Below, in pieces: positions 835 through 62,808 of a stretch of DNA of 64,000 bases. The notes under the pieces were generated by a model. That model was not told the DNA's origin and made no database searches. It saw only the letters and a program-made list of their open reading frames with translations. Within the stretch, counting starts at the first letter, position 1; each line of letters opens with the position of its first letter. The position numbers and the translations under genes are program-made. This stretch comes from Octopus sinensis. Its lineage: Eukaryota. Location: NCBI RefSeq assembly GCF_006345805.1, contig NC_043017.1, positions 17,484,001 to 17,548,000 on the forward strand, written 5' to 3'.

Positions 835-917
835 TTCTTGTTTATGGAATGGAACTCTCCCCGAACTGCCTGTGGATGGCAACATGCCTGGCGCAATTTC
901 ATTAATGGATGCAAAAG
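835..917 (-). CDS. SHPRH: SHPRH coding exon 14 ([27 protein letters not shown])
   Basis: gttgccag acceptor, AA|gtaagt donor; LRQACCHPQ motif. It is in a different frame from the 748..1083 ORF-track entry. Confidence 0.92.
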
Positions 918-12900: not shown

Positions 12901-15900
12901 ATACTTGCCCTACATGTCACTCAGTAGAATTGAACCCTCAATCACATGCTTGTGTAGTAAACTCCATATGGCTATGTCCATGAGTGCATTAGTTCCAAAA
13001 TAAAGGCAACCCTAAAATACTTACAAACCACCATACTTGTTGTAATAAAGGGTTCTTCCATCTAACGTCTGGAAGTCAGTGAAGAGAGGATGCAACTTAT
13101 TGGCTGAAAGAGAAAAAAATAGTTCTTTTTTTCAAAAATAATACTTATGGCAGACAGAGTGTGTGTGTGAGAGAGAGAAAGAGAGAGATAATCATCATCA
13201 TCATTTAGCATCTGTTCTCTGTGCTGGCGTGGGTTGAATAGTTTGACAAAAGCAGGCAAGTTCTTTCATCTGTTTTGGTATAGTTTTTCTATGGCTGGAT
13301 GCCCTTCCTAATTTCCAACCACTTTACAGTGTGTACTGGGTGCTTTTTTTCATGGCACCACCACTGGTGGGGGTCACTAAGTAACTTGCAAGACAAGACA
13401 AAAGAGTCCCTTTGAACATATACATATATGAAGCGATGAAACACAAAGTTAACCATAATGGGGTTTGAACTTGGAGTGTTGCAGAGAACCTGCACAAACA
13501 CCACAAAGCATTTCTTCTATCTGACACTCTAACAACTCTGTTAATCTGATGCATCAATTCATAGTTGGAAAGGATATTATTCAGGAAGAGCTTCATCCAG
13601 AAAACACTAAGATTCAGTAAGAGAGGGTACCTGTTTCTTTACTACCCACAAGGGGTTAAACACAGAGGGGACAAACAAGGACAGACAAACGGATTAAGTC
13701 GATTACATCGACCCCAGTGTGTAACTGGTACTTTAGTTATCGACCCCAAAAGGATGAAACGAATTAAGTCGATTACATCGACCCCAGTGTGTAACTGGTA
13801 CTTTATTTATCGACCCCAAAAAGGATGAAAGGCAAAGTCAACCTCGGCGGAATTTGAACTCAGAACGTAGCGGCAGAAGAAATACGGCTATACATTTTGT
13901 CCGGCATGCTAATGCTTCTGCCAGCTCGTCACCTTTACTAAGAGAAGGTACCATCCAGTTGTCAAAACAACTTTTCCAAGAATGAAATAATCTGGCCTGT
14001 GATATCATGAAATATATTGATATATTGGGTCGAGTTGTAAATAATTTCTGCTTTTTGGAAGTAAATTGTAAGAACGCATTTCGAACTTCAGCTATTTAAA
14101 ATTGAAATGGAAACTACCATTTTTAAAAGAGCCTCATCTGTCATTCATATTCAAGCAGTGAAAGCATGCACATCATATTTTAATATTAAATTTCACTCCC
14201 CTAAAATGGATGAACTCTCTCTCTCTTTCGGAGAGGCACTGAGCAGCTATACGCACACATACACACACGGCAGTAACTTCCACCAACCGAATTCAATCAC
14301 AAAGCTTCGGTCGGCTCAGGGCTATAGTGGAAGATACCTACCCAAAGTGCCATGCAGTGGGACTGAACCCGAAACCATGTAGCTAGGAAGCAAGCTCCCT
14401 AACCACACAGCCATGCCCGAAAGTGCATATTTGATATGTGATGATGCGGGAGTTTAAGAATGGAAAAAACACTATGGAATATCTAAGAAAATATACAGTG
14501 ATCATGGCTAAGGTGTCATTACTGACCAGCAAGTGCAGAATTGGTTTCAAAGCTTTGTTCTGGAGATTTGTCATTGAGAAATCGACTCAAACCAGGACGC
14601 TCAACAGACTTCAATCAAGATGCTTTCAGAGAATTCGTGGAATTCAATCCTCATAAAAGTACTCAGGAGTACTGACTTCAACATATCCTAATCCATCATC
14701 TGCTGCCACTCAGAAAAGATAGGAAAAACCAGCAAACTGGGTGTTTGGGTTCTCCATATGCCTATTGAGAAGAATAGGGAGGATTGCATGTCCATAGTGA
14801 CAAGTTTTCTTTTAGGGCAGAGAAATATCCTGTTTCTCAATAATATCATTACAGCTGATGAAAAATGGGTCTTTTATGACAATGTTCAATGCAAAAGGCA
14901 GTGGATTGTCAAGGATAAATCTTCACAACCTACTTCAAAGGCTAAGCTCTATGGAAGGAAGGTTACGTTGTATGGTCGGATCACCGCAGTATTATTCATT
15001 TTGAGTTTTTAAACTGCAATCGAACGCTAAATTCTGACTTATACTCTCAAAAGTTGCAATGTGTGCATGAAAATCTCTTAAGAAAACGTCCTGCACTCGT
15101 CAATAGGAGAAATGTTGTGCTTCTCCATGATAATGCAAGACCACCATTCAGCAAGAGTTACGCAGGATAAAATATTGGATTTGGACTGGTCTGTTGTACC
15201 CCATCCCCATCAATCATATTTACCAAGATCTTGCACCAACTGATTTCCATCTTTCTCACTCTCTGATGAGGAAAACATTTTCTCATGAAGATCAAGTGAA
15301 GACACATGTGGAAAGCTTCTTTACCAACTGAATTTTACTTGAGAGGAATCAAAAAGCTACCTGATAAATGGCAAGAGGTCATTCGAGCGTGATCGTTACC
15401 AACATCGCCTTACTGGCACCCTTGCCGGTGGCATGTGTAAAAAGATTCGAGTGAGGTCATTGCCAGTACCGCCTGACTGGTCCCCGTGCTGGTGGCATGT
15501 AAAAAGCACCCACTACACTCTCGGAGTGGTTGGCATTAGGAAGAGCATCCAGCTGTAGAAACTCTGCCAGATCTAGACTGGAGCCTGGTGCAGCCATCTG
15601 GTTCGCCAGCCCTCAGTCAAAATCGTCCAACCCATGCTAGCATGGAAAGTGGACGTTAAACGATGATGATGATGATACTGAAGATTGAAAATAATTCTTT
15701 GTAAAGTTTTTTCATGAGAAAAGGTGTTTAACAAAATCGGAAATTATTTATGACTCAACACAATAAAACAATAAAAAAATTTTAAATTACAGAAGGATAT
15801 AAGAAAGATTTCTTTTGAGATTCTCACCATTTTCTTGATAATTTGTAGTTTCTTGTTTCAACATCCAAGTCACAGATTTTTTCTGGTAATTCCGAAGAAA

Positions 15901-17914
15901 TGGTTTTAATGCTGCAGGTTGGAGATCTTCACTGACATCTAGTGGGTTCCTCTGATGGATCTTATGTATCTCATTGAAAAGTTCCTCAATATCTGGTTTA
16001 ATGGTTGCAATGCTGCTGTCAAAAGCTGTAAATTTACAAAATCATAAATTAACCCTTTTAATGCAAAAATCACATATACATCTACTCAAAATTTCATTAC
16101 CCTTAACTTCAGAAAGCAGTTTTATCTACCAGTCTATTTTTTGTTGAAGAATGTCATGTTTGAAACTATGTTGCTATAAACTCTAACTAATGCAACCAAT
16201 GGCGGTGCCCCAGCATGGCCACAATTCGTGAGCTGAAACTAGATAAAATGAAAATGAAAATACAAAAGTAGACATTAAAATAACAAGGATAAGCTTCTTT
16301 TAGTCTCCTCTGACCAAATTCATGCACAAGACTTTGGTCAGCCTGGGGTTATAGTAGAAGATACATGCTGAAGGTGCCATGCCACACAGTGGGATTGAAC
16401 CTGAAACCATGTGGTTGGGAAGCAAACTTTGCAACCCTAGAGCTTCAATGGGGCAAATAATGAAGAGATACTCAAATTTGGGCTGGGATTGCCTATAACT
16501 AACAGTATCAACACACAACTCTGCAATTCAGTTTTAAGTGTGAGTTTTGTTTGGGGAAAAAGCAAAAGAAACCAAGAATATTTCAACTTGTGTAGACAAG
16601 GAGAGAACGCCATATCAGACATGACGAAATGAACAGAGAACAGAGTAAACTGAGAAGTCACTATAATCTCATGCATTGTGTGTGTATGAGTGTGAGTGCA
16701 ACCAAACTTAACTTAGCTTTTTTTATCTTCTAGGTCATCATCAACTTAGAAAAATTTAGGCAGAAATCTAAAACATATCTGTAATTCAAGTGTATATGAT
16801 ATACTGACACCAATCTTTTAATGGCGTAGGGACACATGGCTTAGTGGTTAGGTATTAAACTCATGCGCGTAAGATTGTGGTTTTGATTTCTGGACTGGTC
16901 AACGTGTTGTGCACTTGAGCAGAACACTTCGTTTCATGTTGTTCCAGGCCACTCAGCTGGCAAAAATGAGTAATCCTGAGATGGACCAACATCCCATCTA
17001 GTGAATATATACACCATGGAAATCAGACAATCAGTGCTATGATTATTTTAATGACTATACCTTTTAAAGGAAGTTGACCAGGGCAAAATTTGAACTCAGA
17101 ACATAAAAGTATGTAACAAATACCATAAGGTATCTCTTCCAACAGGCTACCAATCCTGTCATGCCCCACTCTCAAGAGGTGAGGGTGGTATTTAAAGCTC
17201 AGATTTCAAATATTTTTTCTACTCACTTTCTTCATGGATGTCATAGAAGTACTTCATTATTTGTTTAATAAACACAGAATTTCTTTTAATTTGAGAAGTT
17301 TCCGATGGATAGTTCAATTTAGTCAATCCAGTTTCCTTTATCAATGCATACACATCAGCAATTCCTGCATCAAAATCTATAGTAATGCACTGCATTAATA
17401 GAAGGTTGCATTTCAATGCAGTAAATACAACATCTGGTACATCAGAGCTGACTTGAATGAAATTAGCTTTAATAGGAAAACCATTCTTCCTATCCCTTTG
17501 GTCAACAGTCTCTTCGAAATAGAACATACTGCAGCCAATCTCATTGCTAACATACCAATAGACGATTTCAGAAGAGGGCAACCCAATTTCCTGTGCATAT
17601 AAATTTTGTTCAGAGTTTAACAGCTGCACTTTTAAATGGCCAATTGGAATTAGTCTCATTCCTTTCAGATTTGTTTGTAATTCAGAGAAAATATGAAGCT
17701 TTAAGAATAAATGGCAAGAATTTAAACAAAAGTTGAAGAAGTTCTCTGTTTTTTCATTTGGGAATGCATAGTTCTCACAAGAAGTTTTCTTATTTTTTTT
17801 AGCTTTTGATATTACTCTCTGATCTTCAACTGCCTTAAATTCAGATGCTTGTAATAAGTTAATAGTTGATAAGTCTGAACGGCGCTGCGGAACAACCTGC
17901 TTTCTCTTCCCCAT
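835..17914 (-). CDS. SHPRH: SHPRH E3 ubiquitin ligase / SNF2-family helicase, 5' portion (14 coding exons, about 729 codons; continues beyond the left edge of the window)
   Basis: Spliced by hand with GT-AG introns and consistent phases. It yields SNF2 motifs [29 protein letters not shown], a PHD finger, GATLIVAP...[34 protein letters not shown] and [20 protein letters not shown] inserted in the ATPase N-lobe is characteristic of SHPRH. Confidence 0.95.
1741..2113. mobile_element. Tc1-like MITE remnant
   Basis: Imperfect TIRs taggtgcagcatatatatcaaccc / gggtaaaagtatatgcaacacctg. Confidence 0.5.
2311..2376 (-). CDS. SHPRH: SHPRH coding exon 13 ([22 protein letters not shown])
   Basis: ttttcaccag acceptor, CGT|gtgagt donor; in phase with both neighbours. 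Confidence 0.85.
3765..3872 (-). CDS. SHPRH: SHPRH coding exon 12 ([27 protein letters not shown])
   Basis: ttctgtag acceptor, CAG|gtaaaa donor. Confidence 0.92.
4027..4258 (+). mobile_element. tRNA-derived SINE family A, full copy with a 19-bp TSD (other copies about 13643-13925 -, 23660-23835 -, 25496-25949 +, 41113-41342 +, 45860-46080 +)
   Basis: TSD tatatttgatagtggtggg at 4008-4026 and 4259-4277; B-box-like gagttcaaattcc. Confidence 0.88.
4698..4861 (-). CDS. SHPRH: SHPRH coding exon 11 ([19 protein letters not shown]...[13 protein letters not shown])
   Basis: tttctag acceptor, GAA|gtaagg donor. Confidence 0.92.
4944..5368 (-). mobile_element. tRNA-derived SINE family D with a 27-nt poly(A) tail (related copy about 54902-55180 -)
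   Basis: On the minus strand: A-box TGGCCCAGTGG, B-box GGTTTCGATTCC; poly(T) at 4944-4970 on the plus strand. Confidence 0.8.
6391..6469 (-). CDS. SHPRH: SHPRH coding exon 10 ([26 protein letters not shown]; motif III)
   Basis: ttctaag acceptor, G|gtaagt donor. Confidence 0.92.
6561..6892 (-). mobile_element. SINE family B with a (GAT)n tail and internal tandem repeat (copies about 8483-8872 -, 15385-15676 +, 49630-49985 -, many fragments)
   Basis: Recurrent catcatc-gtttaacgtccg-tttccatgctagcatgggttggacg end; internal repeat ggatggtgctttttacgtgccac. Confidence 0.8.
7728..7772 (-). CDS. SHPRH: SHPRH coding exon 9, 45 nt ([15 protein letters not shown]; Walker B)
   Basis: cattgcag acceptor, AAA|gtaagt donor. 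Confidence 0.92.
9032..9111 (-). CDS. SHPRH: SHPRH coding exon 8 ([26 protein letters not shown])
   Basis: tttgcag acceptor, CGG|gtaagt donor. Confidence 0.92.
9394..9520 (-). CDS. SHPRH: SHPRH coding exon 7 (VYEG...[22 protein letters not shown])
   Basis: ttgcag acceptor, T|gtaagc donor. Confidence 0.92.
10171..10650 (+). mobile_element. 3' fragment of a Penelope-like element followed by a tRNA-like/hammerhead-containing repeat
   Basis: 10179-10370 translates as [31 protein letters not shown]...SIWEPVL (GIY-YIG C-terminus-like). 10411-10650 matches 54372-54605. Confidence 0.7.
10728..10835 (-). CDS. SHPRH: SHPRH coding exon 6 ([27 protein letters not shown])
   Basis: helicase motif Ia; ttcag acceptor, |gtatgt donor. 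Confidence 0.92.
11342..11530 (-). CDS. SHPRH: SHPRH coding exon 5 (PHD finger CICG...CVMC...HGEC...CPHC)
   Basis: C4HC3 spacing; ttaaag acceptor (weak), TCA|gtaagt donor. Confidence 0.88.
12308..12482 (-). CDS. SHPRH: SHPRH coding exon 4 (helicase motif [14 protein letters not shown])
   Basis: ttattttag acceptor, CAG|gtaata donor. Confidence 0.92.
13025..13103 (-). CDS. SHPRH: SHPRH coding exon 3 ([25 protein letters not shown])
   Basis: ttctctttcag acceptor, TT|gtaagt donor; bridges phase 1 to phase 2. Confidence 0.88.
14023..15765 (+). mobile_element. Full-length decayed mariner (Tc1/mariner) with two nested SINEs
   Basis: About 33-bp imperfect TIRs (tattgggtcgagttgtaaataatttc / gaaattatttatgactcaacacaata). 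Frameshifted transposase with GVWVLH, ITADEKW, HDNARP and DLAPTDFHL-like motifs. SINEs at about 14238-14415 and 15385-15676 interrupt it. Confidence 0.88.
15828..16025 (-). CDS. SHPRH: SHPRH coding exon 2 ([16 protein letters not shown]...[20 protein letters not shown])
   Basis: acag|CT acceptor, G|gtgaga donor; SNF2 Q-motif; not in the ORF track, read manually. Confidence 0.9.
17227..17914 (-). CDS. SHPRH: SHPRH coding exon 1 ([13 protein letters not shown]...YDIHEE)
   Basis: 231-aa ORF. A ttttttcag acceptor lies 2 nt before the ATG, implying an upstream non-coding exon. Donor A|gtgagt at 17226, phase 1. Confidence 0.85.
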
Positions 17915-20067
17915 CTCTGAAAAAAAAAAATATTAAATAATATTAAATAATATAATGATTGCTAATACAAGCCTCAAATTCGGGAAAGAGGCATAGTCAA
18001 TATCAATTACAGTACTTGATTAGATCCCAGTACTCAACTTGTACTTTATTTTATCATCGACAGGAGGATGAAAAGCAAAGCTGACCTCATTAGGATTTGA
18101 ACTTAGAACATAAAGGATTGTAAATACTACATATTATTTTGTCTAGCACTCTAATGATTCCACCAATCCACCATTCTGAAAGACATTGATTTCAAATTTT
18201 GGCACAAAGCCAGCAAATTCAGGGCAGGGGGGTAAGTCGATTACATTGACCCCCACCAGTGTTCAACTGGTACTTATTTCATCAACCCTGAAAGGATGAA
18301 AGGCAAAGTCAACCTCAATAGAATTTGAACTCAGAACATAAAGACAGACGAAATGCCCAACTTACTAACGATTCTGTCAGCCCACCACCTCACCATTCTG
18401 AAACATATTAATGATGGTTTTTGTTGTAGTGATTGCTTTATATGCTAGACATGACAGCTAAATCTTCCTCAAATCACATCCTATCATCACAGAAAGACCA
18501 AGCTGGTCAAAAGCAAGTCTTTTGATCATAGAGTATCTCAGACAATGCTGAGTGCTAAAGATAACAATGAAGACTTTGATAGACTATAACTACAGTAAAG
18601 TTTTTTCAAAAGTTGTTTCATACAACCAAATCCCCAACCATGTTATAAATGATGGCAGGTGTTGGGTGGAAGACCTTTGATCATAGGCCACCTCAAAGAT
18701 GGCTTGGTGCTAAAAACAAAAGCGACTATTTTGATGGAGTATAAAAACATTAAAGTTTCCTCAAAATCTCCTTTCATATGTAACATCTCCCTCAAAATAA
18801 CACAATACTATCTTAAATTGTCATAGATACACGAAGCAGGCATGACTGTCACGATTGGACCGTCTTTGATTATATGTCTGTTCAATCATATAATTGTTGA
18901 TGAAGAACAACAATCATATGAAATTCACTAAATCTTCTCATGAAGAAATATCAATGAGGAATACAATGTTAAAGTGATAATTATTCACAATGGTAAAACT
19001 TTAAATTTGGGCAAACCAAGGATTCTTTGTAAAGGTAAATATTGGTGTTTACAGAAGAATTTGCTAAGTTCAATAAACATCATCGTTTGACAGGGCAGGT
19101 ACGAAAAATTGTGTAAGGGCCCAAAAGCGTTAGGATTCTACAACTCTCTCCTATTGACAGACAACGTCAGGAACATTACCAATGAGTTAACTTCCCTAGT
19201 AACCAGTTACTAATAAACTATTAACCGGAGTCAAAAGGTTTGAAACTGATTAATAATCCTATGTTTGAATAAAAGATGGGACGGGGCTTTAATGGTTGGA
19301 ACACCTTTGATCTGCAAGTGTAGCTATTTTGTTTCGATTGGGAGTTATTTATTAATCAACTTACCAAAGCTTGCCTAGGATTAAACAACAAAGATTTTGA
19401 TGAAATAATATTGACGGCCAAAAGTTTTTTTTACAGTTTTAGCCGAACGAACTTTTATGCAAATTACGTAAGTTTAATAACAAATCAACTAGTTAGCTTA
19501 ATGGTTATTCCCTAGTAACCAGTTGTAAAGGATTTTGAAAGAGACCGATGAAACTTTGACTAAAAGATTGATAACACTGTTATGTTTCTCCAGTTTTTTT
19601 TTTGTTTTTTTTAGAAGATTGTCCTAAAGTCAGTAACATTCGGTTCCTGAAAGAAAGTTGATAACTTCATTTAAAAAACTAAAGATGGATCCTGGTTTCT
19701 GTTTTTTTTGTTGTCAACAAACCACGAGACGAACGAATCCGGAATTGTCTCCCTTAAACTCTGTCAAATCTTGACATTTTAACAATTTTTGTTGGCTAAA
19801 AATATAGAAATATACCAAAATATAAATATCCCTGGAATGCTATATTTCAATATTATTATTTATTTTAACTTTGCTCCAAATAAAATTTAAAGAAAGTTAA
19901 AATGAACTTTAACATAACTTTATGTCTGACTAAAATATAACACAATTTCCAAATTTTTAACAGAACTTATTTGTTTGGTATACAGAAATATATCAAAATA
20001 TAAAAACATCTACACAGAAATATATCAACACAAAACATCAACAATCTTTAAAGTTGAAGGTTGATAT

Positions 20068-20699
20068 TTACTTTAACACACCTGGCCACCAAAACAAAAA
20101 AAAAACAAGTGTAAAAAATGTTTATTAAACGAATATGAGAACAAAAATTTGCGCCAACGAACTCATTATAAACATTCAATACACCTCTTCTTACCCCCAG
20201 CGCTGGCCCCCGTTTTTTTTTAATACTGTGAAACATTCCATACAGCTCTTCCTGACCGAAAGAACTCGAAGTAATTAACCGAAAATATTAAACAAACACG
20301 GTATCAGATGGCCATAAGATGTGCTAAAAACAATAGCTAAAACGCCCTTCACTTTTTTTTTTCCATAATGAAACCATATTCAACACCGCATTTATGAATT
20401 TATTTCCCTCGCCATGGTACATGTGATCTATTTTAAAACCTTTTTCTTTAACTCAAACGAAAAATAAATGAATTTAAAAATTTCATTTTCAAACTTTTTT
20501 CCATTACTCTCAAAAAATAATAAGTCCTCTCTCCAACCCTCGGAAAAAATTTTACCCACAAATTTCTTTATAATCGGTTCTTTGGCGCAAATTTTTGTTA
20601 TATTCGTTCAATACACATTTTTTTTACACCTATTACACTTTTTTTTTGTTTTGGTGGCCGAGTATTAAAGTAATGCTTACTTTAACACTCGGCCACCAA
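20068..20699. repeat. Inverted repeat (arms 20068-20172 / 20567-20673) ending in a 23-bp-arm palindrome (20651-20699)
   Basis: Manual reverse-complement alignment; both arms carry TTGGCGC. Confidence 0.75.
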
Positions 20700-20894
20700 T
20701 TTAAATATTAATTATTTTACATTCTTTAATGAAGAAGTAAATAAAATTGTTAATGCAGACATTAACGTAACTACATTTCTGTCTTTCTGACTTAAACATA
20801 ATTTTCCAACGGTCAAACTATTTCGTTTGTCAAAAAAGCATACAAAAATACACCAAAGTATAAATATATCTGGAATATTGGAAAGACTTGGGAC

Positions 20895-20904
20895 GGGCGG
20901 AAGT
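20895..20904 (+). promoter_or_regulatory. Overlapping GC-box (GGGCGG) and ETS-type (CGGAAGT) motif
   Basis: GGGCGGAAGT in otherwise very AT-rich DNA, inside a short hairpin AAGACTT...AAGTCTT. Confidence 0.35.
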
Positions 20905-21670
20905 CTTGCCGGTATATTTTTATTTTAATATTATTTATTTACATTTTTTCCTGGTACGTCGCACTTTAAAATAATTATTATACTGACGTTATACGGACTT
21001 TAATATAAATTTTCCAAGACTATCTCGGAATAATTTACTTTCATTTACCACTATATAATTTATTTATTTTAAAGTAGAACGTATCTAAAGTTGTGTTAAA
21101 ACCGATGTATTCGATCAATAGTCTTAGGGGTGACTAAATGTCTCCTAACTATCGTAATTATGAGAATTACGAAAGAGCAATATTAAAGAATAAAAACGGT
21201 TAGACATTAATTCTTCATTAAATTCGATTTCCAACATTAATAACAAACACAGAACCAAAATAACGAAGTCGGCTTAAGAACAGAATATTTCTTATTTAAA
21301 TCTACTCTTACTACAAATAATAACAAATTAGTTTTTACTCGAATGATTTCCATCTATTATTTCAATGCATATGTGTGTATAAATAAATATATATGTTTCT
21401 ATACATGTGAAATGTAAGTTACCTGCAGTATTAGGGAGATTAGTTTTATAAAATCGAACGATTACAACGACTAAATAACTGAAAATAATCCAAAATAAAT
21501 CATTGAAGCTGAAGAGTTTCTATAAAAACCTGCCATCTTTGTTATCAATTCCATTGTTTATACAGAGTTGAAAGTAATCACATCTATGAACTGCCTACAA
21601 CTTTCGTATTTTATTTTGCATTTAATAAATATATTTAAATTAAAATTTTATCAATTAATGAATTATTCGA

Positions 21671-22259
21671 GGATCTTTTCAGTTTGAACGGCAGTTTTTT
21701 TCTAGCGGTGTCATATGAAATTGTCACCCATAATTATGACCCTAGTATCGATCTATTGCATTTCAATCAGTTTTAGGGTTAGGGTTAGAGGTGGGGGGAA
21801 AGGGTATCTTTTTTTCTTCACAAATGTAAATAAACTCAATCTCTTTCTTGGATCTTTTCGGTTTGAACGGCAGTTTTTAACATAATTTCTAGGTAACTAA
21901 AAAATTTTAAACTTCGTATACTGGTAGAATGTGTTTATAAAACATCTTTTTCTCTTGGCTTTATTGAGAAAATTTTATAGTTTGTAAGATATTTGTTGTT
22001 TTTTCTTCAATTTCTGCAATTTCAACCAATCAATGACGTCCATTGAGGTAAAAAAAACATTCTGTGCCTTATGAATATGTCCCTCGTTTAAGAAACAGAT
22101 TGGGGTTATTTACATTTGTGAAGAAAAAAAGATACCCTTCCCCCACCTCTAACCCTAAAACAGATTGAAATGCAATAGATCGATACTAGGGTCATAGTTA
22201 TGGGTGACAATTTCATATGACACCGCTAGAAAAAACTGCCGTTCAAACCGAAAATATCC
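21671..22259. mobile_element. Same MITE family: a full copy (21850-22259) preceded by an inverted half copy (21671-21842)
   Basis: High similarity to 37162-37580; 21671-21842 is the reverse complement of about 22097-22259. Confidence 0.85.
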
Positions 22260-22739
22260 AAAAATACAATATGGACTGGATATAATGGAACACAGAGGTA
22301 AAGTAAGTGATATTACTTGGTGAGGCAAGTAACACCATATTCATCTTTCATTATATCATACGTTTTATTTGTTTTCCTTTGTTTTATGTCCCCAAATGTG
22401 ATGTATTGTTCCTCTTTGTTAGCCCGTTGAGGGTAATAAAGAAATAAGTTTTAATTGTTTGTTGTATTCTCACTTGATAGAGGGAACATAAGATCACTAT
22501 ACACCGGCAGCAGACTGACTTGCAAGATAATGAAAAATATCTTTGTTTATTAGTTTGGTATTCGTCAAATAAATAAATATATAAATCACAATTGTGAATG
22601 AAATTATATTTATTTTAAAATCTATCTAGCGAAATTTTCTATTTTTTTCTTCTCGTGACATTTTGTTATCACATTAACAGAAACTTTCTCACTTTTGAAA
22701 GTTTCGTATGATCCACTTCAGTCTAGTGACGACTTGGTT

Positions 22740-22787
22740 GAATTCTGGCGCCAAACCAAACAAAATAGATTTTCCAGTTTCTCTCTG
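22740..22787 (+). other. ATAD5: Candidate non-coding first exon of ATAD5 (5' boundary unknown)
   Basis: Consensus donor CTG|gtaagt at 22788, next to an E2F-type site. The start exon has an acceptor at 27392 that needs an upstream donor. Confidence 0.45.
22746..22755. promoter_or_regulatory. E2F-type site (TGGCGCCAAA; reverse = TTTGGCGC)
   Basis: Exact TTTSSCGC match 33 bp upstream of the candidate first donor. Confidence 0.45.
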
Positions 22788-25662
22788 GTAAGTCTGGTTA
22801 TTATATAGTCCTCATTCTCTCTCCCTTTTTTGACGACTGTATCTTGGGGATATATTCAGTAGCTGTTAATTTATTAACCAAAAACTGAACAAAATGCTTT
22901 AATTATATCAATTATTATTGTCATATCTGTATCTATGTCTATGTAGCAAGCTTAGCGAGTCTCTCTCTGGCTTGTCTTTTAGTTGGCGACTGTCTCTGAA
23001 ATATATATATATACATATATATTATGTCGATATTAATTAACCAGGAAACTAAATAGAACACTCTTTTAACAGTATTATCAGTTATTGCCATGTATCTGTC
23101 TGTGTTGTTTGGTTTTTACAAGCGGGAGGGGAAAATGTAAGTGTATTTGTAAAACTAAACATATTTATATAATTAGAATTAGTCTTTAATTAATTTCTCT
23201 CGTAATTTCCGCTATTAAAACATACACCAACACACACATCAAACCAGAATAGGGAGACACTAAGAGAATGAAATTTATCTTTGTTACATTTTATGCTCCG
23301 TAGAGTAGAGCACTTAAAAATTGTTTCCCGCACTTGGGTGTTTATCATATATCTATGTCTACATTTACGTTTGGTTTCACTGACGGGAGCAAAATATTTC
23401 AGAATGTAAAGTTCCAAATATATTACATAATTAATATTTTGTTTCTCTAATACTAACCTAAAAAAAGACACGAAATAAATACCTTTGTTGCTTTTTATAT
23501 GTCGTAAAGTAGGACATTTCAAAAGTTTCCCACATTTGACGTATTTATCGCACTGTTCATTATTAACGAACTTCCCCCATTGTTTTTAATTTAATTTATA
23601 ACTTGACCTCCCGAATAATAATATTAATCCTTTCTGCTATTGGCACAAGGCCTGAAATTTGGGGTAAGCGGGGCCAGTCGATTGGATCGACCCAGTAAGC
23701 AACTGGTACTTAATTTATCGAGCCCGAAAGGATGAAAGGCAAAGTCGACCTCGGCGGAATTTGAACTCAGAACGTAACTGCAGACGAAATACGGCTACGC
23801 ATTTCGCCCGGAGTGCTAACGATTTTGCCAGCTGGTTTCAAATTTTGATGCAAGGCCAGCAATTTCGGAGGAGGGGATAAATCGATTACATCGACCTCAG
23901 CGGAATTTAAATTCTGAACATGAAGATAGACGAAATGCCGATAAACATTTTACTCGGTGTGCTAACGATTCTGCCACTGTCATATTGACAGCTGGTGAGA
24001 GAATACAATCATTTGTACTGTTTATGTTAAGCTTCCCTCTTCCCATCACCAGGTCAGAACTATTTGAGATTTATAAGACAATAGGCTGTTATTTCTAGCA
24101 TGTCGAGCGATCACACTGTGGCTCTCTCGTTGACTCGTTGTGTATCCCAGTGTTGTGATGAAGTTGTTTAGCTTCTAGGTCAGCTCTAATCGAGCAGGCT
24201 TGTTTATTTACTATCAGAGGCACTCTATACGTGGCCAACCAGTCATGCAGAACTAATTCAATATATCTTTTATAAATAAAGGATGATAGCGGGAGATTAG
24301 GTTGTGGTTTCTTGCATATTCGGAATTTCCGTCATCTAAAACAGGAAAAAAAATTTTGTAAAAAGTTCAAAATTTTAAATTGGGGGTGGAGGGGTGAAAT
24401 AAAAAAAAAAATTTTTTGCATATTCGTAATCTTCGACATCTAAAACTTAGGGATCCGAAGAAATTTTTCAAAAAAATGCATTTTTTCAGGAGAGGTGCGA
24501 TTCTGCATTAGCCCCACTTGCTATTTCTTGAAACTCCAACGCGCACGTAGTGGCTTCTTTGTCTTTTGGAGTTTATCTTAGTGGGAAATCCACGTACATG
24601 GTGATCATGTTGTTGATCCAATCATAACGACTAGTGTATCAAAGTCTTTTACAGTCCGTCATGAAAAATGTCGATCAGATGTTAGATTGAATGGTAGATA
24701 TTCTTTCCATTTAGAATGGGGAAAAAAAAATCCTAAGTAGGTGGCGTTAGAAAATGGAAATTTAGTAGAATATTAGGGAAAAAATCGAAAAAGAAGTTAA
24801 AATGATTTATTGAAGTTTGTATTTCGTTTGAAAACAGTTTTATTTAGTAATTATTTGTAATCTTTGTTGGTGAAAACAAGAATCTGAAGAAAAACAGAAG
24901 GGGTGTGTTTATTCTTCTAGACATTACCGAATAGTATTAATATTTCCACTTCCATTTTGTGGTCAAAAACCGAAAGAATATCTGTGAGACAGATGGAATA
25001 CTTGCAGTTATACAATAATACTTGGATTTCTTATGTTGTTTTTAGCTTCGTGTCAACTATGGTTGGGAGAACATGTTTAAAATATTTTTGTTCAGTTTTA
25101 TCTGTTTTTTTCTTTTGTGGTGTATCTAGGACTATGTTGAAGAATGTTTAATTGTGGCATTGTTTTACCACCTCACTGCCCTTCCTTTGTTTTTCAAGTA
25201 ACAGATTTTCTTATTCCGCACATATTTGAAGATCTAAAGCAAGAGGAAGACTAGTTCTTGATCAGAGATTAAGAAACTTGTTTGCCAATTACATGCTTGG
25301 GTTTTGTCCCGCTGCTTGGTACCTTGGGCAAGTGTCTTCTCCTATAGCCTCAGGCTGACCAAATCCTTGTTAGTAGATTCGGTAGAGAGGGAAGCTTAAA
25401 AGAAGCCTATCATAAATATGTGTCTGTGTTTGTACCCCACCACTATTTGTCAACTGGTTTGACAAAAGGGACCAATAGAATAGGTACTATTAAGGTGGTG
25501 AGCTGACAGAAACGTTAGCACGCTGGGCGAAATGCTTACCGGTATTTCGTCTGCCGTTACATTCTGAGTTCAAATTCCGCCAAGGTCGACTTTGCCTTTC
25601 ATCCTTTCAGGGTCGATAAATTAAGTACCAGTTACGCACTGGGGTCGATGTAATCGACTTAA

Positions 25663-25882
25663 CCCTTTTGTTACTAACCCGGCCAAAACTGGCTCTGGTT
25701 CTGTGGTGAAATGTCTTGTTTACATAAGTTTTGAATTAAAATCTTCCACCAAATCTTAGTCACAATTTACATTTCTAACACTAGCTTGATGATAACTAAG
25801 TTATTTTACTAAATTCTTTGTTATATTTGAAATAATTGAAAGAAACACAGAGCATCTCAACAGAAATACAGTAACGAAAGGG
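25663..25882. mobile_element. Second piggyBac-type MITE family, nested in a SINE
   Basis: TIR CCCTTTTGTTAC / GTAACGAAAGGG; inserted at the SINE's own TTAA, which is duplicated (25659-25662, 25883-25886). Confidence 0.85.
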
Positions 25883-26187
25883 TTAATCCGTTTGTCTATC
25901 CTTGTTAGTCCCCTCTATGTTTAGCCCCTTGTGGGCAATAAAGAAATAAGAATAGGTACCAGGCTTAAAAAATTAAGAATTGGGGTCGATTCATTTGACT
26001 AAAATTTCTTCCAGGCAGTGTCCCAGCATGGCCACGGTCTAATGACAAACAAGTAAAAGATGAAAGATTTAATCTTTGGGTGCAATACAAATCCTAATAT
26101 GGTCGTTTCTGTTTTAGAATCCTGTCTTTCCAAATATATTAACCATTCAGTTTGTTTCTTATATTCCTGTTGATACCCTAAGATTAA

Positions 26188-26405
26188 CCCTTTAGTATTT
26201 AAACCGGCCATATCCGGCCAAAATAGTTAATCTGTTTCATGTTCAAACTGACCAGATCCAGGCTCTCACACCTACCCTACAATGTTATTCTACATAAGTA
26301 ATTACACCATCAAGATCTTGAAGATATGAGATAATGCATGATTAATTTAAATCAATGGGAATCAATAGGCATCATGTTTGATAGAATAATCTGAACACTA
26401 AAGGG
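26188..26405 (+). mobile_element. piggyBac-type MITE (TTAA|CCCTTTAG...CTAAAGGG|TTAA)
   Basis: TTAA TSD at 26184-26187 and 26406-26409. Confidence 0.85.
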
Positions 26406-27392
26406 TTAAACATACAATATAGTTCAAAGGGGTAGAACCTTATTTTTTTTTTTTTATCCATAATGATTTTAGATATTAGCTTCTACAAACTTTTATAAAG
26501 TTATTACTTCTTCCCAGCTATGTGGGCTTGGGTTCAGTCTCACTGCATGGCACCTTGGGCACATATCTTACCGAAGCCGTGTGCCAGAAACTGAAAGCAG
26601 TCAATCGTATATGTATATATTACCATAATATATAGGTGTGTGTGTGTTTTGTGTGTACCCTTGTCTTGGACATCACTTGATTATTGTAAATGAGCATCAT
26701 CATCTTCCTGCAAATGAGGTTGTTTGTTTTTGGTCTTCTGTGAAAACCATGTCTGGCTATGAGAAAATACTACTCAATTTGGAAACAGGTGAGGGTTGGT
26801 GACAGGAAGGGCATCCAGTTATGGAAAATCTGCCTCAAATTCTTTTTTACCCATACAGGCGTAGAGGAGTGGGCATTGGATTCAATAATACTTATTACTC
26901 TAGACCCGTGGAAGAGGGAGACCCAGGTAGATATGGGACGAAGGGGTAAGGATCGATCTCAGGATGTTGGGTATCATGGAGGAAAGGACAATGGACTGAG
27001 ATGAAAATTGGCAACCCTGTCGCAGACCCTCTAAAATTACTTTGCAGACCTCTTTTTGGGAGCCAAGGTTGTATAGGCTGAGGTATGTGAGTGTGGTTAA
27101 GAAGCTCTCTTTGCAATCATGTGCTTTTGGGTTCAATCCCACTGAAATGCACTTTGGGCATTTTCTACTGAAAGGATTAAAGAGATATAAAGTCATTTAA
27201 AATTTTTGAATTTGATCACCCCTTTCCAAACCTCACGAACCCCATGTTTTCAGCAACATTGATTTAATATGCCACAGTAGTTGATAGTAGAAAGGCCATC
27301 AAATTATTCAAACTGCTTTCTTTTCTTTTTTTTTTTTAATTAGCTCCTTATATAATTGATAATAATTAATTCTGTTTTATCTTTATTCCCAG

Positions 27393-27416
27393 ATGCCTGA
27401 ATTCATGATACCATAA
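27393..27416 (+). other. 7-codon upstream ORF (MPEFMIP*) ending 1 nt before the ATAD5 ATG
   Basis: ATG CCT GAA TTC ATG ATA CCA TAA A ATG. Confidence 0.6.
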
Positions 27417-27417
27417 A

Positions 27418-27471
27418 ATGCTGGGATCTTGTGTAGTTGATACCCCTAATGGCAGTTTAGACTGTCATAAG
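27418..27471 (+). CDS. ATAD5: ATAD5 coding exon 1 (MLGSCVVDTPNGSLDCHK); the exon starts at 27393
   Basis: tttattcccag acceptor at 27392, AAG|gtaagc donor; phase 0 into the next exon. Confidence 0.75.
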
Positions 27472-30400
27472 GTAAGCTGTTTAAGATGTTTACATGTGAA
27501 TATATTGTTATTTTGTATTAATATTGGTTTCAAATTTTGTCACAAGGCCAGCAGTTTTTTGGGGGAGGGGCCAAATCAATTGAACTGACCTCAGTGTTCA
27601 ACTAGTGCTTATTTTATCAACCATGAAAAGATGAAAAGCAAAGTCAACCTTGATGAAATTTAAATTTAGAACAGAGATGAACGAAATATTGTTGTTTACC
27701 TGTTGTTTCTAGCATGTCAGGTTTTCTGGTGGTGCTTTAATATTTTTTATGTCTGCTATTTCAGTACAATTCTACACATGCGAGAAACATCAGACGAGAG
27801 TGAATCATAGGGTATTTTTAGCTTTTTGAAAGCGGGTAGGTGATGGGTGGGCAAGGTGGGGGAAGGGGCATTGAGTGTTTCTTTACCCCTTTAGTGTTCA
27901 GATTATTCTATCAAACATAATACCTATTGATTCCCATTGATTTGAATTAATCATGCATTATCTCATATCTTCAAGATCTTGATAGTGTAATTACTTAATG
28001 TAGAATAACATTGTAGGGTAGGTGTGAGAGGCTGGATCTGGTCAGTTTGAACATAAAACAGATTTACTATTTTGGTCGGATATGGCCGGTTTAGATACTA
28101 AAGGGTTAAAAAATATATATATATTTCCCAAATTTGTAATCTCTTTATTTTTCTACATGGATAGAAAAAAAAAAATTCGGAAAAAAGTTACAAATTAAGA
28201 AATTGCAGTGGGGATGGGGGAGGGTGGAACTAAAATTTTGAAAACGTGATTTCTGGGCAAAATCGTATTAACCCCCTTTTATACAATGGAATAATACACA
28301 GTTTGCAGAAATCACTTTCATGCAAGCCCATGCAAATTGTTCCCTCCCCTCCTTTACTTTTAAACAAACAATAACTTCCATTATGCCAGTAATCCAGTTC
28401 ACTATATATCAGCTGTGCTGATTCTGCCCATAAGAAAGGAACAAATAATACAATATGCTGTAAGTCATAACACCCAGGCAACATCGGGATGCATTGCTAG
28501 TCCTCAAATAAAACTCAGTTTCATAAGAACTTTTTGGCACTGTTCTCAGTGCTGAACCATTATTTGGACTGTTACATAATGTCAGATAGGTATTAAATAT
28601 GTAGGTTAATCTTAAAATACATTTAATATATCTTCTTTGTTTCTTTTTGTTTTCTTTTTCTTTCTTAGGAGGTGAATAGTTCAAAGAAGACTATTGCAGA
28701 TTTCTTTGGTAAATCCTCTCAGAATAGTTCCAGTGCAATTAAGAAACCCACAAATTTACTGAGTTATTTTACTAAAGACCCTCATTCACGTGTGTCTAAT
28801 GGAAAAACAGAGACATCAGTGGGATCATCAGTCTTGGAAAAACTTACACAAGTACCTGTTAAGAACGATACAGTGAAAAAGAAACTTTTGGAAAAGAATT
28901 TAACTGTTAGTCCAACGGATAAAAGTAGTTCTATGGATAAGAATAGTCCTGAGGCCAGTTCTATGGATAAGAATAGTCCTGAGGCCAGTTCTTTGGATAA
29001 AAGTAGTTCTAATGCCAGTTCTTTAGATAAAAAACGGAAACGTGCTAGTAAAGTACTGAGTGGAGATGATTTTGTTGAGATCACTCAACCAAAACGTTTT
29101 AAATCTACAGACAGTATTTCATATGAAGAATCAAAGACAGCCATATCTCTACCTTCAAAAGAGCCTTTTTTAGAGAAAATGCCTGAAAATATTTCTAATA
29201 CAGAATCAAAAACATCTGACCAAAATATTGATCTTTCCAATGATGATGATGATTTTATTTCAAAAACAGATGCTACTAGCACTTCTAAAAAAGTTGTTTT
29301 GTGTGAAAATGACCAGGAATTACCTAAAAGGAAATACACAAAGAAAAATTCCAAAAATTGTATAAATTCTAATATGTTGAACAAACAGTCAAAATTGAAA
29401 TCATCAAAGACCCAACAAGTTAATGTTGGTAAAAGTAATTCATTAAATATGTATTATTGTGAAAAAGATAAAAAGAAACTTTCTGATAAAAGTGAAAGAG
29501 AAAAAACAGATTCTTTTAATTCTAGTGATCCTCCTCAAAATTCGAAAGAAATTTCTGCGAGTAATTCCTGCAACAGCAGCATTGTCAACAGTGAATTAGG
29601 TCCATCTAGTCCGACATATTTAAATACAAAGTCAGATTTAGATGAAAGTTGTCAGTCACTGAAAGTTCAAACTTGTGAAAACGATGACCAAGACGCTATG
29701 GAACTCTCATATGAAGAATTTTTACTTTCTCAGACTGTTGGTGATGAACAATCTGTAAATATGGAATTTGCCAAAATGAGTCCAGAAAAAGCACTTCCTT
29801 CTAAATGTGATCCTATTCCTATGTTTGTTGACTCAGGAAAGACGGATTTATGTAATTCTCAGCAAGTTACTGTTGTGGCTGACATACACCCGGAACCATC
29901 TTTAAGCTTACCAGCTACATCTAATACTGCAGATAATTCCAGTAAATCTGCAGAAGCCATTTTGAAAAGTGTCTCTTCAGAAGTCATTAAATCTAAAAAC
30001 CAAGATGTTAATGACATAGTTGTCTTGGATACAGAAGTGTTAAATAAAGCCGATGAGATTCCTGTTGTTGATGATGATGGTGATGATGTTTCACATAAAG
30101 AGCAAGAGAAACAAACTAAATCAACACTTGATGTAACCACGAAAAAGGTCATTCCTAGCCATAAGTTCAAGCCTGTCTCAAAAGCTAAGAACCAAAAGTC
30201 TGCAGTAATATCCAATTCCATTGGTGTAAAATGTTCGCAGTCAACACTGAATTTTGAACAAGGTAACTTAGATCTTAACTCCAATTCTGTTTCAACTGTT
30301 TCTGTTGGGAATACTAAAGGAACTCTGAAAACACTTTCAAAGCAATCAAAGATTGGTGCCAAGATTATTGTGCGACAGCAAAACAGGGGTATTCACAGAA

Positions 30401-33400: not shown

Positions 33401-33663
33401 AATGAAAAAACTTGTCAAGAAGGTAATGGTGAAATATATCTTTTAACAAATGTTTCCAAGCTGGGTTGGGTTGGTCAGTTTGGCGGGATTTGGTGAGCTG
33501 CTAGGTTGCATTCATCATCATCGTTTAACATCCGCTTTCCATGCTAGCATCGGTTGGACGATTTGACAAAAGAGACCGATAAAATAAGTACTGGGGTCGA
33601 TTTGCTCGACTAAAGGCGGTGCTCCAGTATGGCCGTAGTCAAAATGACAAACAAGTAAAAGAG

Positions 33664-33735
<72 letters not shown>

Positions 33736-39166: not shown

Positions 39167-39205
<39 letters not shown>

Positions 39206-46923: not shown

Positions 46924-46956
<33 letters not shown>

Positions 46957-52688: not shown

Positions 52689-52719
<31 letters not shown>

Positions 52720-61303: not shown

Positions 61304-61494
61304 CTATTTAATCATTCCACATCTCTGCTGCAAGAACTTGGAAGATATACGTTGAAAATTATCTTGCAAATATCTATCACCACCGTGTTTCTGCCACTCA
61401 TTTTCAAATGTGTTCTCGAGAATCTCGGCACCTTTCTTCAGCTGTAAGCCGGTCTCTTCCAGACTCAGCTCACACATCTGCATGTCGTCAACAC
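61304..61494 (-). CDS. Last coding exon of an unidentified protein-coding gene (VDDMQMCELSLEETGLQLKKGAEILENTFENEWQKHGGDRYLQDNFQRISSKFLQQRCGMIK*)
   Basis: Good acceptor (ttttttgtttgcttatcag at 61495), balanced non-repetitive codons, TAG stop, followed by a long A-rich UTR-like tract (60780-61303 on the minus strand). Confidence 0.75.
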
Positions 61495-62678: not shown

Positions 62679-62715
<37 letters not shown>

Positions 62716-62808
62716 CAAAATTTAGATTCAGATGAATATGGTACTTAAGTTAAAGGCACCAACATTTTTTATGGTATTATCCATATAAATCAAACGGGAT
62801 GATTATAA

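What the first reader, a model, noticed from the sequence alone, without database searches (positions are those of the whole stretch)
17914..27418. Head-to-head pairing of SHPRH and ATAD5: a possible co-regulated PCNA-ubiquitin on/off module
Seen: the two genes diverge, and both start exons carry splice acceptors, so their true transcription starts lie inside the 9.5-kb gap and closer together than the ATGs. Established: SHPRH is a Rad5-type E3 that polyubiquitinates PCNA for damage tolerance; ATAD5/Elg1 unloads PCNA and recruits USP1-UAF1 to deubiquitinate it. The human genes are on different chromosomes. Inference: this lineage has placed a writer and the unloader of the same PCNA mark next to each other, possibly on one bidirectional promoter.
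Basis: partly seen in the sequence, partly recalled or inferred. Interest (0 to 1): 0.75.

Follow-up and report, generated by a model that had tools for sequence, protein, structure and literature searches.

The report
Octopus SHPRH–ATAD5 divergent gene pair
In Octopus, two DNA-damage-tolerance genes that act on the same PCNA ubiquitin mark (SHPRH and ATAD5) sit back-to-back 9.5 kb apart, a real arrangement already present in public annotations and seen in octopods but not in the outgroups checked; whether they share one promoter is still unproven.

Summary
The window is Octopus sinensis CM016879.1:17,484,001-17,548,000. SHPRH starts at 17914 (-) and ATAD5 at 27418 (+). The start codons are 9,504 bp apart with nothing annotated or detectable between them. 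Both start-codon exons follow strong splice acceptors.

The pairing is not an assembly artefact. It recurs in O. vulgaris and O. bimaculoides. In Argonauta hians the genes are about 82 kb apart with a Rad4/XPC-like gene between them. In scallop, mussel, an annelid and several vertebrates they lie on sequences of different length, so on different chromosomes.

The gap holds the window's only sustained CpG-undepleted zone (about 19-25 kb), with two peaks. It also holds SHPRH 5' exons, at 19,798-19,724 and about 24.6 kb, the latter from an O. vulgaris isoform. All three E2F-consensus sites of the window are in the gap.

So the transcription starts do lie inside the gap, probably no more than 3 kb apart. 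A single bidirectional promoter and a selected "on/off module" remain untested. Published work reports that novel cephalopod gene neighbourhoods are generally not co-expressed.

This is an ordinary member of a known class, a divergent DNA-repair gene pair. Interest is low to moderate.

The parts
17224..17916 (-). SHPRH start-codon exon (ATG at 17914), preceded by a strong splice acceptor; it encodes aa 1-230
834..16023 (-). Further SHPRH coding exons (aa 231-730), including SNF2 motif I (12481-12308) and the PHD finger (11536-11342). The gene continues beyond the left end of the window.
19724..19798 (-). SHPRH upstream internal exon ('1b'), with acceptor tttttag|CC and donor GTG|gtttgt. It is coding in the O. 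vulgaris isoform CAI9738378.1 and nearly identical (2-3 substitutions in 75 nt) in three Octopus species.
24577..24599 (-). Homologue of the first coding exon ('1a', MYVDLPR) of the O. vulgaris SHPRH isoform CAI9738378.1. It marks an SHPRH start at or above about 24.6 kb. In O. sinensis the donor at 24576-24575 reads AT instead of GT.
19001..25000 (.). The only sustained CpG-undepleted zone of the window. CpG o/e is 0.92 without the SINEs, against 0.35 in the rest. It is inferred to be the germline-unmethylated promoter / 5'-UTR domain of both genes.
   Evidence: PMC9476566
20001..21750 (.). CpG peak 1 (o/e 1.2-1.8, GC 26-31%), a candidate proximal SHPRH promoter. It contains the inverted repeat 20140-20172 / 20567-20599 and an E2F-consensus site at 20581-20588 that is not conserved in O. 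bimaculoides.
21664..22266 (.). Foldback (inverted-repeat) element. At this position O. bimaculoides carries about 10 kb of CpG-poor repeat sequence instead.
22700..22790 (+). Conserved block (100% O. vulgaris, 96% O. bimaculoides) with TGACG, a palindrome-like E2F site (TTTGGCGC on the - strand, 22748-22755) and a strong + strand donor CTG|GTAAGT, with the last exon base at 22787. It is a speculative candidate for a non-coding first exon of ATAD5 or a shared regulatory element.
23251..25000 (.). CpG peak 2 (o/e about 0.9-1.25). It contains a conserved E2F-consensus site (23324-23331), a CCAAT box and a TGACG near the exon-1a homologue. Part of the signal comes from two young SINE copies (23628-23976).
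27393..27471 (+). ATAD5 start-codon exon (ATG at 27418, 18 codons). It follows a strong acceptor and contains a short upstream ORF (ATGCCTGAATTCATGATACCATAA). The donor is AAG|GTAAGC.
27418..53152 (+). Complete ATAD5 coding region, 16 or more exons. It includes the large exon 2 (28669-30570), Walker A (42012-42185), Walker B (near 45000), the RFC1-like lid (47070-47480) and the ELG1_C end (51626-53152).

Best explanation
This is a genuine, lineage-restricted divergent (head-to-head) gene pair.

Origin. SHPRH and ATAD5 lie on different chromosomes in other molluscs, an annelid and vertebrates. They came to lie on the same chromosome in an ancestor of octopods. This was most likely part of the large-scale coleoid genome reorganisation. 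They are immediate neighbours in the genus Octopus.

Structure. Both genes have spliced 5' leaders, so their transcription starts lie inside the 9.5-kb gap. The gene bodies are CpG-depleted, which fits germline methylation. A roughly 6-kb stretch of the gap (about 19-25 kb) has kept its CpGs, which fits an unmethylated promoter domain.

My best reading of the promoters:
- SHPRH has a distal start at about 24.6 kb. Transcripts from there run through an internal exon at 19.8 kb. There is probably also a proximal start region in the first CpG peak.
- ATAD5 starts in the second half of the same zone (22.7-25 kb).
- The two start regions are therefore at most about 3 kb apart and may overlap.
- They are flanked by conserved E2F-type sites, which would fit S-phase or proliferation-linked expression of both genes.

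Shown: identity, orientation, absence of an intervening gene, conservation in Octopus, the CpG landscape, and the upstream SHPRH exons.

Inferred: the methylation state, the position of the ATAD5 start, E2F control, and any co-regulation.

The adjacency itself is most simply a neutral product of rearrangement, not a selected PCNA-ubiquitin module.
For: - Identity and coordinates.
- Adjacency in three Octopus species: O. sinensis; O. vulgaris, collinear at 92-98%; O. bimaculoides, same chromosome with no gene in either 10-kb flank. The protein accessions XP_014771804 and XP_014771805 are consecutive.
There is no ATAD5 within 10 kb upstream of Pecten SHPRH.
- The same contrast is described genome-wide for cephalopods in PMC9023564.
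- Upstream SHPRH exons. Two O. sinensis mRNAs encode the same SHPRH protein.
- Acceptor statistics.
- CpG landscape. It is also seen in O. vulgaris and O. bimaculoides. It matches the octopus 'body methylated, TSS unmethylated' gene class (PMC9476566).
- E2F sites: all 3 in the window fall in the gap, and 2 are conserved in three species.
Against: - No transcript, CAGE, ATAC or methylation data could be reached. The ATAD5 start is therefore not located.
- The distal SHPRH start rests on one computational isoform from a sister species. Its splice donor is mutated to AT in O. sinensis.
- The CpG-preserved zone has two peaks. In O. bimaculoides they are separated by about 10 kb of CpG-poor repeats, which fits two independent promoters equally well.
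- Part of peak 2 is due to young SINE copies.
- The E2F count for the whole window is not above chance: 3 found against 1.8 expected.
- Sequence identity among Octopus species is uniformly 92-97% across the gap, so conservation does not single out functional elements.
- The O. bimaculoides distance of 21.4 kb is unreliable because of N-runs.
Confidence: 0.55

Rival explanations
1. Two independent promoters, neutral neighbours. SHPRH is driven from the proximal CpG peak (20.0-21.75 kb) and ATAD5 from the distal one (22.3-25 kb). The starts are several kb apart. The O. vulgaris transcript starting at about 24.6 kb is a minor or upstream-antisense product. Any expression correlation reflects only that both are proliferation genes.
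For: - The CpG o/e profile has two peaks in all three Octopus species.
- In O. bimaculoides a roughly 10-kb CpG-poor insertion separates the two peaks.
- The donor of the distal SHPRH exon is lost in O. sinensis.
- Cephalopod-specific neighbours are generally not co-expressed (PMC9023564).
- In Argonauta the genes function with another gene between them.
Against: - SHPRH exon 1b carries a bona fide acceptor, so some transcripts must start further upstream than 19.8 kb.
- An annotated O. vulgaris isoform starts at the 24.6-kb homologue.
- The O. bimaculoides insertion would simply lie in SHPRH intron 1 under the shared-zone model.
Confidence: 0.3
2. One reading: a selected, co-regulated PCNA-ubiquitin 'writer / unloader-eraser' module driven by one bidirectional promoter. 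The pairing would be retained because stoichiometric co-expression of SHPRH and ATAD5 is advantageous.
For: - The genes are functionally related. HLTF or SHPRH polyubiquitinate PCNA, and ATAD5 promotes deubiquitination of mono- and poly-Ub-PCNA (PMC11348035).
- The arrangement is kept in three Octopus species.
- The CpG-preserved zone contains conserved E2F-type sites.
- Bidirectional promoters are often associated with DNA-repair genes (PMC1853124).
Against: - The three Octopus species are close relatives (about 89-98% DNA identity), so retention says little about selection.
- Argonauta has an intervening gene and about 82 kb between the two genes.
- There are no expression data.
- The starts are not shown to be within 1 kb of each other.
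- With thousands of new adjacencies created by coleoid rearrangement, some functionally related pairs are expected. My rough estimate, which is inference only: with about 20 pathway genes among about 25,000 genes, there is a 1-2% chance per genome that some pair from this one pathway is adjacent. The chance is much higher across all pathways a reader might notice.
Confidence: 0.12
3. An assembly or annotation artefact: a mis-join or mis-called genes creates a false adjacency.
For: The O. bimaculoides assembly has N-runs in the region, and its annotated ATAD5 first exon sits on an island between gaps.
Against: The O. vulgaris locus has no gaps and the O. sinensis window contains no N. These two independent assemblies are collinear through the whole gap. 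Both proteins are full-length with the expected domains.
Confidence: 0.01

Closest known systems
Divergent (head-to-head) gene pairs with bidirectional promoters, as catalogued in human and often involving DNA-repair genes (PMC1853124, PMC3552671)
   Same: The two genes are in divergent orientation with no gene between them. Both act in DNA-damage tolerance. The intervening region is CpG-preserved, and the candidate motifs are TATA-less in style (E2F, CCAAT).
   Different: The usual definition requires transcription starts less than 1 kb apart. Here only an upper bound of about 2.8 kb can be given, or 7.6 kb if the O. vulgaris isoform is disregarded. The zone is AT-rich (GC 26-44%), so it is not a vertebrate-type CpG island. 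Co-expression is untested.
Cephalopod-specific ('novel') microsyntenies produced by coleoid genome reorganisation (Schmidbaur et al. 2022, PMC9023564; Albertin et al. 2022, PMC9068888)
   Same: Genes that are on different chromosomes in scallop and other outgroups are tightly linked in cephalopods, with a short distance between them.
   Different: Those blocks are defined as three or more genes conserved across squid and octopus. Here only a pair is shown, only in octopods, and Argonauta has an extra gene inside it. Neither gene name appears in that paper's supplementary files held as text.
Human SHPRH (6q24) and ATAD5 (17q11.2) loci
   Same: The proteins are orthologous. SHPRH has SNF2, PHD, the SHPRH helical domains, RING and Helicase_C. 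ATAD5 has the AAA+ module, the RFC1-like lid and ELG1_C.
   Different: The human genes are unlinked (chromosome bands from my own knowledge; consistent with different contigs in other vertebrates). The octopus SHPRH shows no detectable linker-histone (H15) domain, which the vertebrate proteins have.

Membership tests
SHPRH (SNF2 / PHD / RING helicase E3 ligase) | SNF2-related ATPase domain split by inserted domains, plus the C-terminal helicase domain | tested here: met
   SNF2 motif I is in the window ORF 12263-12550. In the O. bimaculoides orthologue P0001 (95% identical in exon 1), SNF2-rel_dom has E=8e-71 and Helicase_C E=5e-9.
SHPRH (SNF2 / PHD / RING helicase E3 ligase) | SHPRH-specific helical domains (PF21325, PF21324) | tested here: met
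   P0001 scores E=6e-38 and E=4e-22. The same families are recorded for the O. sinensis and O. vulgaris products. These domains lie outside the window, further along the gene.
SHPRH (SNF2 / PHD / RING helicase E3 ligase) | PHD finger and RING finger | tested here: met
   The PHD finger is in window ORF 11315-11539, with E=2.4e-5 and 24.7 bits against a cut-off of 24. RING families hit P0001 residues 1155-1199.
SHPRH (SNF2 / PHD / RING helicase E3 ligase) | Linker-histone H1/H5 (H15) domain, PF00538 | tested here: not met
   There is no PF00538 hit in P0001, nor in the precomputed domains of any molluscan SHPRH, whereas vertebrate SHPRH proteins carry it. Orthology is still clear from the SHPRH-specific domains.
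ATAD5 / Elg1 (PCNA unloader, RFC-like large subunit) | AAA+ module with Walker A and B, and an RFC1-like lid | tested here: met
   GPQGIGKT and LILFDEV are present. AAA_lid_RFC1 is weak, E=0.009 on the single exon. PF00004 is recorded for the full products.
ATAD5 / Elg1 (PCNA unloader, RFC-like large subunit) | ELG1 C-terminal domain (PF28135) and best reciprocal similarity to ATAD5, not to RFC1 or CTF18 | tested here: met
   PF28135 is on record for the O. sinensis and O. vulgaris products. Nearly all of the 120 listed hits of the AAA+ region that carry a name are named ATAD5 or ATAD5-like (the rest are unnamed, 'hypothetical' or 'uncharacterized'); none is named RFC1 or CTF18.
ATAD5 / Elg1 (PCNA unloader, RFC-like large subunit) | N-terminal region that binds UAF1-USP1 and promotes PCNA deubiquitination | not tested
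   The N-terminal exon 2 is low-complexity and poorly conserved. No motif-level comparison with the human UAF1-binding region was made.
Bidirectional promoter gene pair | Adjacent genes on opposite strands, transcribed away from each other, with no gene between | tested here: met
Bidirectional promoter gene pair | Transcription start sites less than 1 kb apart | tested here: inconclusive
   Only bounds are available. The SHPRH start is above 19,798, and above about 24,599 by homology to an O. vulgaris isoform. The ATAD5 start is below 27,393. No transcript 5' ends were accessible.
Bidirectional promoter gene pair | Correlated expression, or one fragment driving both genes | not testable with these tools
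   No expression, ATAC or reporter data are available.
Cephalopod-specific microsynteny (sensu Schmidbaur et al. 2022) | Linkage absent in non-cephalopod outgroups | tested here: met
   The two genes are on contigs of different length in Pecten, Mytilus, Owenia, Lingula, Mizuhopecten, Potamilus and several vertebrates.
Cephalopod-specific microsynteny (sensu Schmidbaur et al. 2022) | Three or more genes, conserved between octopus and squid or cuttlefish | tested here: inconclusive
   Only a pair is shown. It is conserved in three Octopus species and interrupted by a Rad4/XPC-like gene in Argonauta. No decapodiform or Nautilus genome locus was retrievable. The one decapodiform-like hit was a transcript.

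The most novel reading that the evidence does not exclude
The pair is a selected regulatory unit. In this reading, a short E2F-controlled bidirectional or overlapping promoter (about 22.7-24.7 kb) co-expresses a PCNA polyubiquitin ligase and the PCNA unloader / deubiquitination platform in proliferating octopus cells. The wider octopod locus, which in Argonauta also holds an XPC-like gene between them, would be an emerging DNA-damage-response gene cluster.
Probability: 0.1. Interest if true: 0.5.

Novelty: new member of a known kind. Interest (0 to 1): 0.25.

Why it matters
If the two genes really share a promoter, the locus would be a natural experiment in coupling the writer and the remover of one PCNA modification. 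It would also be a concrete, testable case of a functionally coherent neighbourhood created by the cephalopod genome reshuffle. That would be unusual, because such new neighbourhoods are reported not to be co-expressed as a rule. If they do not share a promoter, the locus is one more incidental adjacency. In either case both genes and their adjacency are already in the public annotations of three Octopus genomes. Nothing here challenges current understanding of PCNA ubiquitin control.

Tried and rejected
1. Transcript 5' ends. I looked for Logan or RNA-derived contigs carrying the start exons. The exact 231-aa exon-1 product is not on record. The only Logan SHPRH contig (SRR6517992, 54% identity, unknown cephalopod) is an mRNA with a 123-nt leader and gives no synteny information.

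2. Failed look-ups. The chiton (P0128) and Pecten (P0157) ATAD5 look-ups failed, probably because these are not the longest isoforms. The Haliotis SHPRH model spans 344 kb and returned no DNA.

3. Conservation as a guide to exons. Identity among the three Octopus species is uniformly 92-97% across the alignable gap, so it does not discriminate. Argonauta non-coding DNA does not align at all, and its CpG profile is too flat to use.

4. Apparent loss of ATAD5 exon 1 in O. bimaculoides. I rejected this. The orthologous position falls in an N-run, L005 8221-9143.

5. Donor-strength scan. Annotated ATAD5 donors score anywhere from about 0 to 8.7. Only 3-4 of the 9 strongest + strand donors in the window are real, so the strong donor at 22,787 is only a lead. 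The donor at 26,788 lies in a dispersed repeat and in CpG-depleted sequence.

6. Bacterial-type promoter/terminator scan. This is irrelevant for a eukaryote and was ignored.

7. Gap ORFs, tRNA and Rfam: nothing found. The HlyC hit at E=0.047 is far below its cut-off and is chance.

8. Literature. 48 papers mention both genes. None of those I looked at concerns gene order.
Full report
WHAT THE WINDOW IS. The window is an exact copy of Octopus sinensis chromosome record CM016879.1, positions 17,484,001-17,548,000, with 0 mismatches over the 45,738 bases compared. It has GC 0.37, contains no N, and shows strong CpG depletion (o/e 0.39 overall).

THE OBSERVATION.
- On the - strand an ORF of 231 aa starts at 17914. 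A search of 1.84 billion representative proteins with it found one strong hit, O. bimaculoides SHPRH (P0001), 95% identical over residues 1-230.
- P0001 has the SHPRH-specific helical domains plus SNF2, RING and Helicase_C.
- The O. sinensis RefSeq protein XP_029649198.1 (P0137) maps to window exons from 17914 down to 834, covering aa 1-730. The rest of the gene lies beyond the window.
- On the + strand the O. sinensis ATAD5 protein XP_029649247.1 (P0144, 1830 aa) maps completely to 27418-53152. It has Walker A and B motifs, an RFC1-like lid and ELG1_C.
- The two ATGs are 9,504 bp apart and the genes point away from each other.
- Both start-codon exons are preceded by long pyrimidine tracts and YAG. 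Only about 1.5% of ATGs in this window have such a signal within 30 nt upstream.

IS ANYTHING ELSE IN THE GAP?
- No ORF of 60 aa or more in the gap has a credible Pfam match. There is no tRNA and no Rfam family.
- The public annotations of O. sinensis and O. vulgaris place no gene between the two.
- The gap contains SINE copies (18028-18354, 23628-23976, 25501-25643), a 600-bp foldback element (21664-22266), another inverted repeat (20140-20599) and dispersed repeats at 26-27.3 kb.

WHERE DO THE GENES START?
SHPRH:
- The O. vulgaris annotation contains an alternative isoform, CAI9738378.1 (P0136). Its first coding exon (MYVDLPR) lies at the homologue of window 24,599-24,577.
- Its second exon maps to window 19,798-19,724.
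- That second exon has a clean acceptor (tttttag|CC) and donor (GTG|gtttgt), and is nearly identical (2-3 substitutions in 75 nt) in three Octopus species. It is therefore an internal exon, and some SHPRH transcripts must begin further upstream than 19.8 kb.
- O. sinensis has two mRNAs for the same SHPRH protein, as expected for alternative leaders.
- Caveat: in O. sinensis the donor of the 24.6-kb exon reads AT, where O. vulgaris and O. bimaculoides have GT.

ATAD5: I could not locate a 5' exon. There is only the acceptor at 27,393.

Indirect evidence from CpG content:
- Both gene bodies have CpG o/e of 0.2-0.4.
- The only sustained CpG-preserved stretch in 64 kb is 19-25 kb, with o/e 0.92 after removing the SINEs against 0.35 elsewhere.
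- It has peaks at 20.0-21.75 kb (o/e up to 1.8) and 23.25-25.0 kb (about 1.0).
- The same pattern is present in O. vulgaris and O. bimaculoides.
- In O. bimaculoides about 9,000 genes have methylated bodies but unmethylated start sites and promoters (PMC9476566). I therefore read the zone as the unmethylated promoter domain. This is inference, not measurement.
- The sequence from about 26 kb to the ATAD5 ATG exon is CpG-depleted and repeat-rich. That suggests it is already intronic, with the ATAD5 start upstream of about 25-26 kb.

Motifs:
- All three matches to the E2F consensus TTTSSCGC in the window lie in the gap, at 20,581, 22,748 and 23,324. The total count is not above chance.
- The zone holds 17.5% of the window's CpGs, so clustering of a CpG-containing motif there is partly expected.
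- The sites at 22,748 and 23,324 are conserved in all three species.
- The 22,700-22,790 block combines TGACG, an E2F palindrome-like site and a strong + strand donor at 22,787. It is a candidate non-coding first exon of ATAD5.
- Only about a third of equally strong donors in this window are real, so I rate this as a lead. If it were true, the two transcription units would overlap head-to-head by about 1.8 kb.

Net result. The upper bound on their separation is about 2.8 kb if the O. vulgaris isoform applies, and 7.6 kb otherwise. 'One bidirectional promoter' is open.

The two-peak CpG profile fits two separate promoters as well as it fits a shared zone. In O. bimaculoides about 10 kb of CpG-poor repeat sequence lies between the peaks, at the position of the O. 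sinensis foldback. Under the shared-zone model that insertion would lie in SHPRH intron 1.

HOW WIDESPREAD IS THE PAIRING?
- O. vulgaris is collinear with the window through the whole region at 92-98% identity, without assembly gaps.
- O. bimaculoides has both genes on CM046621.1. The SHPRH ATG is at 17,964,614 (-) and the annotated ATAD5 CDS start is at 17,986,037 (+). No gene is called in either 10-kb flank, and the gap is otherwise collinear.
- The 21.4-kb figure for O. bimaculoides is unreliable. N-runs interrupt the region, and the orthologue of the ATAD5 ATG exon falls in one of them.
- In Argonauta hians both genes are on BAAFZT010000054.1 in the same divergent orientation. Their annotated starts are 81.7 kb apart. 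A Rad4/XPC-like gene (1041 aa) ends 9.6 kb upstream of SHPRH on the same strand, so it lies between them.
- Outside cephalopods the two genes sit on sequences of different length, and hence on different chromosomes or scaffolds. This holds in Pecten maximus, Mytilus californianus, Owenia fusiformis, Mizuhopecten, Potamilus, Lingula, and the vertebrates Spea, Esox, Leptodactylus and Umbra.
- The 10 kb upstream of Pecten SHPRH holds other small genes, not ATAD5.
- No squid, cuttlefish or Nautilus genome locus could be reached.
- The simplest history: linkage arose in the octopod, or earlier coleoid, lineage. Immediate adjacency is then either ancestral and interrupted in Argonauta, or derived in Octopus.
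- This is what the literature describes genome-wide: hundreds of novel tight neighbourhoods whose members are on different chromosomes in scallop (PMC9023564).

FUNCTION AND MECHANISM.
HLTF or SHPRH with UBC13/MMS2 polyubiquitinate PCNA. ATAD5 unloads PCNA and serves as a platform for deubiquitination of mono- and poly-Ub-PCNA (PMC11348035).
- Nothing in the sequence shows that the adjacency is used. [quoted passage not shown]
- Divergent pairs are common and often involve DNA-repair genes (PMC1853124).
- Three closely related Octopus species are weak evidence for constraint.
- I therefore commit to the following. This is a real, octopod-restricted divergent pair with closely spaced, possibly overlapping, start regions in one CpG-preserved zone. 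Both genes are plausibly E2F/proliferation-driven. The adjacency itself is most likely a neutral outcome of rearrangement.

NOVELTY AND SCORE. Both genes and their order are already in GenBank/RefSeq annotations of three species. I found no paper that remarks on the pairing. It is a new example of a well-known architecture and not a new kind of system. Interest is 0.25. The most novel reading not excluded is a selected E2F-driven writer/eraser unit. I give it about 10% probability and an interest of 0.5 if true.

Noticed in passing
L004:1-385 and L003/L004 record coordinates (Argonauta hians BAAFZT010000054.1, 14.26-14.41 Mb): In Argonauta a Rad4/XPC-like gene (a nucleotide-excision-repair damage sensor family) lies between SHPRH and ATAD5. 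That puts three DNA-damage-response genes in a row within about 150 kb. The position of XPC in Octopus is unknown.
   Followed up: partly
window 24575-24576 (- strand): The splice donor of the distal SHPRH 5' exon is GT in O. vulgaris and O. bimaculoides but AT in this O. sinensis assembly. Either O. sinensis uses another donor, or this leader exon is not used there.
   Followed up: partly
window 21664-22266; L001:1-6532 and L005:1-1931: A 600-bp foldback element in O. sinensis and O. vulgaris sits exactly where O. bimaculoides carries about 10 kb of CpG-poor repeat sequence. This looks like a hotspot of insertion or turnover in the middle of the CpG-preserved zone.
   Followed up: partly
window 23628-23976 and 25501-25643: These SINE copies still have most of their CpGs. 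One copy at about 23.6-23.85 kb and the 25.5-kb copy are absent from O. bimaculoides. Older copies of the same family at 18028-18354 and 27530-27680 have lost their CpGs. Young insertions therefore inflate local CpG o/e.
   Followed up: yes
L005:8221-9143, 10001-10147, 12059-16271 (O. bimaculoides): The annotated first coding exon of O. bimaculoides ATAD5 XP_014771804.2 (MPTSTRATPV...) has no counterpart in O. sinensis or O. vulgaris. It sits on a sequence island between two N-runs, so that start may be an assembly or annotation artefact.
   Followed up: partly
window 27393-27416: The ATAD5 start-codon exon begins with a short upstream ORF (ATG CCT GAA TTC ATG ATA CCA TAA) that ends 2 nt before the main ATG. 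It is conserved in O. vulgaris and could affect translation.
   Followed up: no
window about 28950-29050 (ATAD5 exon 2): The three annotated O. sinensis ATAD5 isoforms (1830, 1814 and 1804 aa) differ only inside a short serine-rich tandem motif (DKSSS / DKNSPEASS). This may be repeat-length or alignment ambiguity and not real alternative splicing.
   Followed up: no
window 14758-15012 (+), 38250-39128 (-), 58394-59339 (-): These ORFs look like transposon remnants inside or beside the genes. One is a mariner-like transposase fragment in a SHPRH intron. Others in an ATAD5 intron and downstream of ATAD5 resemble retroelement endonuclease or reverse-transcriptase sequences.
   Followed up: no
window about 61300-64000 (- strand): The gene downstream of ATAD5 is a class VI myosin, convergent with ATAD5, in both the O. 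sinensis and O. vulgaris annotations.
   Followed up: no
P0001/P0137 versus vertebrate SHPRH: Octopus and other molluscan SHPRH proteins show no detectable linker-histone H15 domain (PF00538), the 'H' of the vertebrate protein's name.
   Followed up: partly
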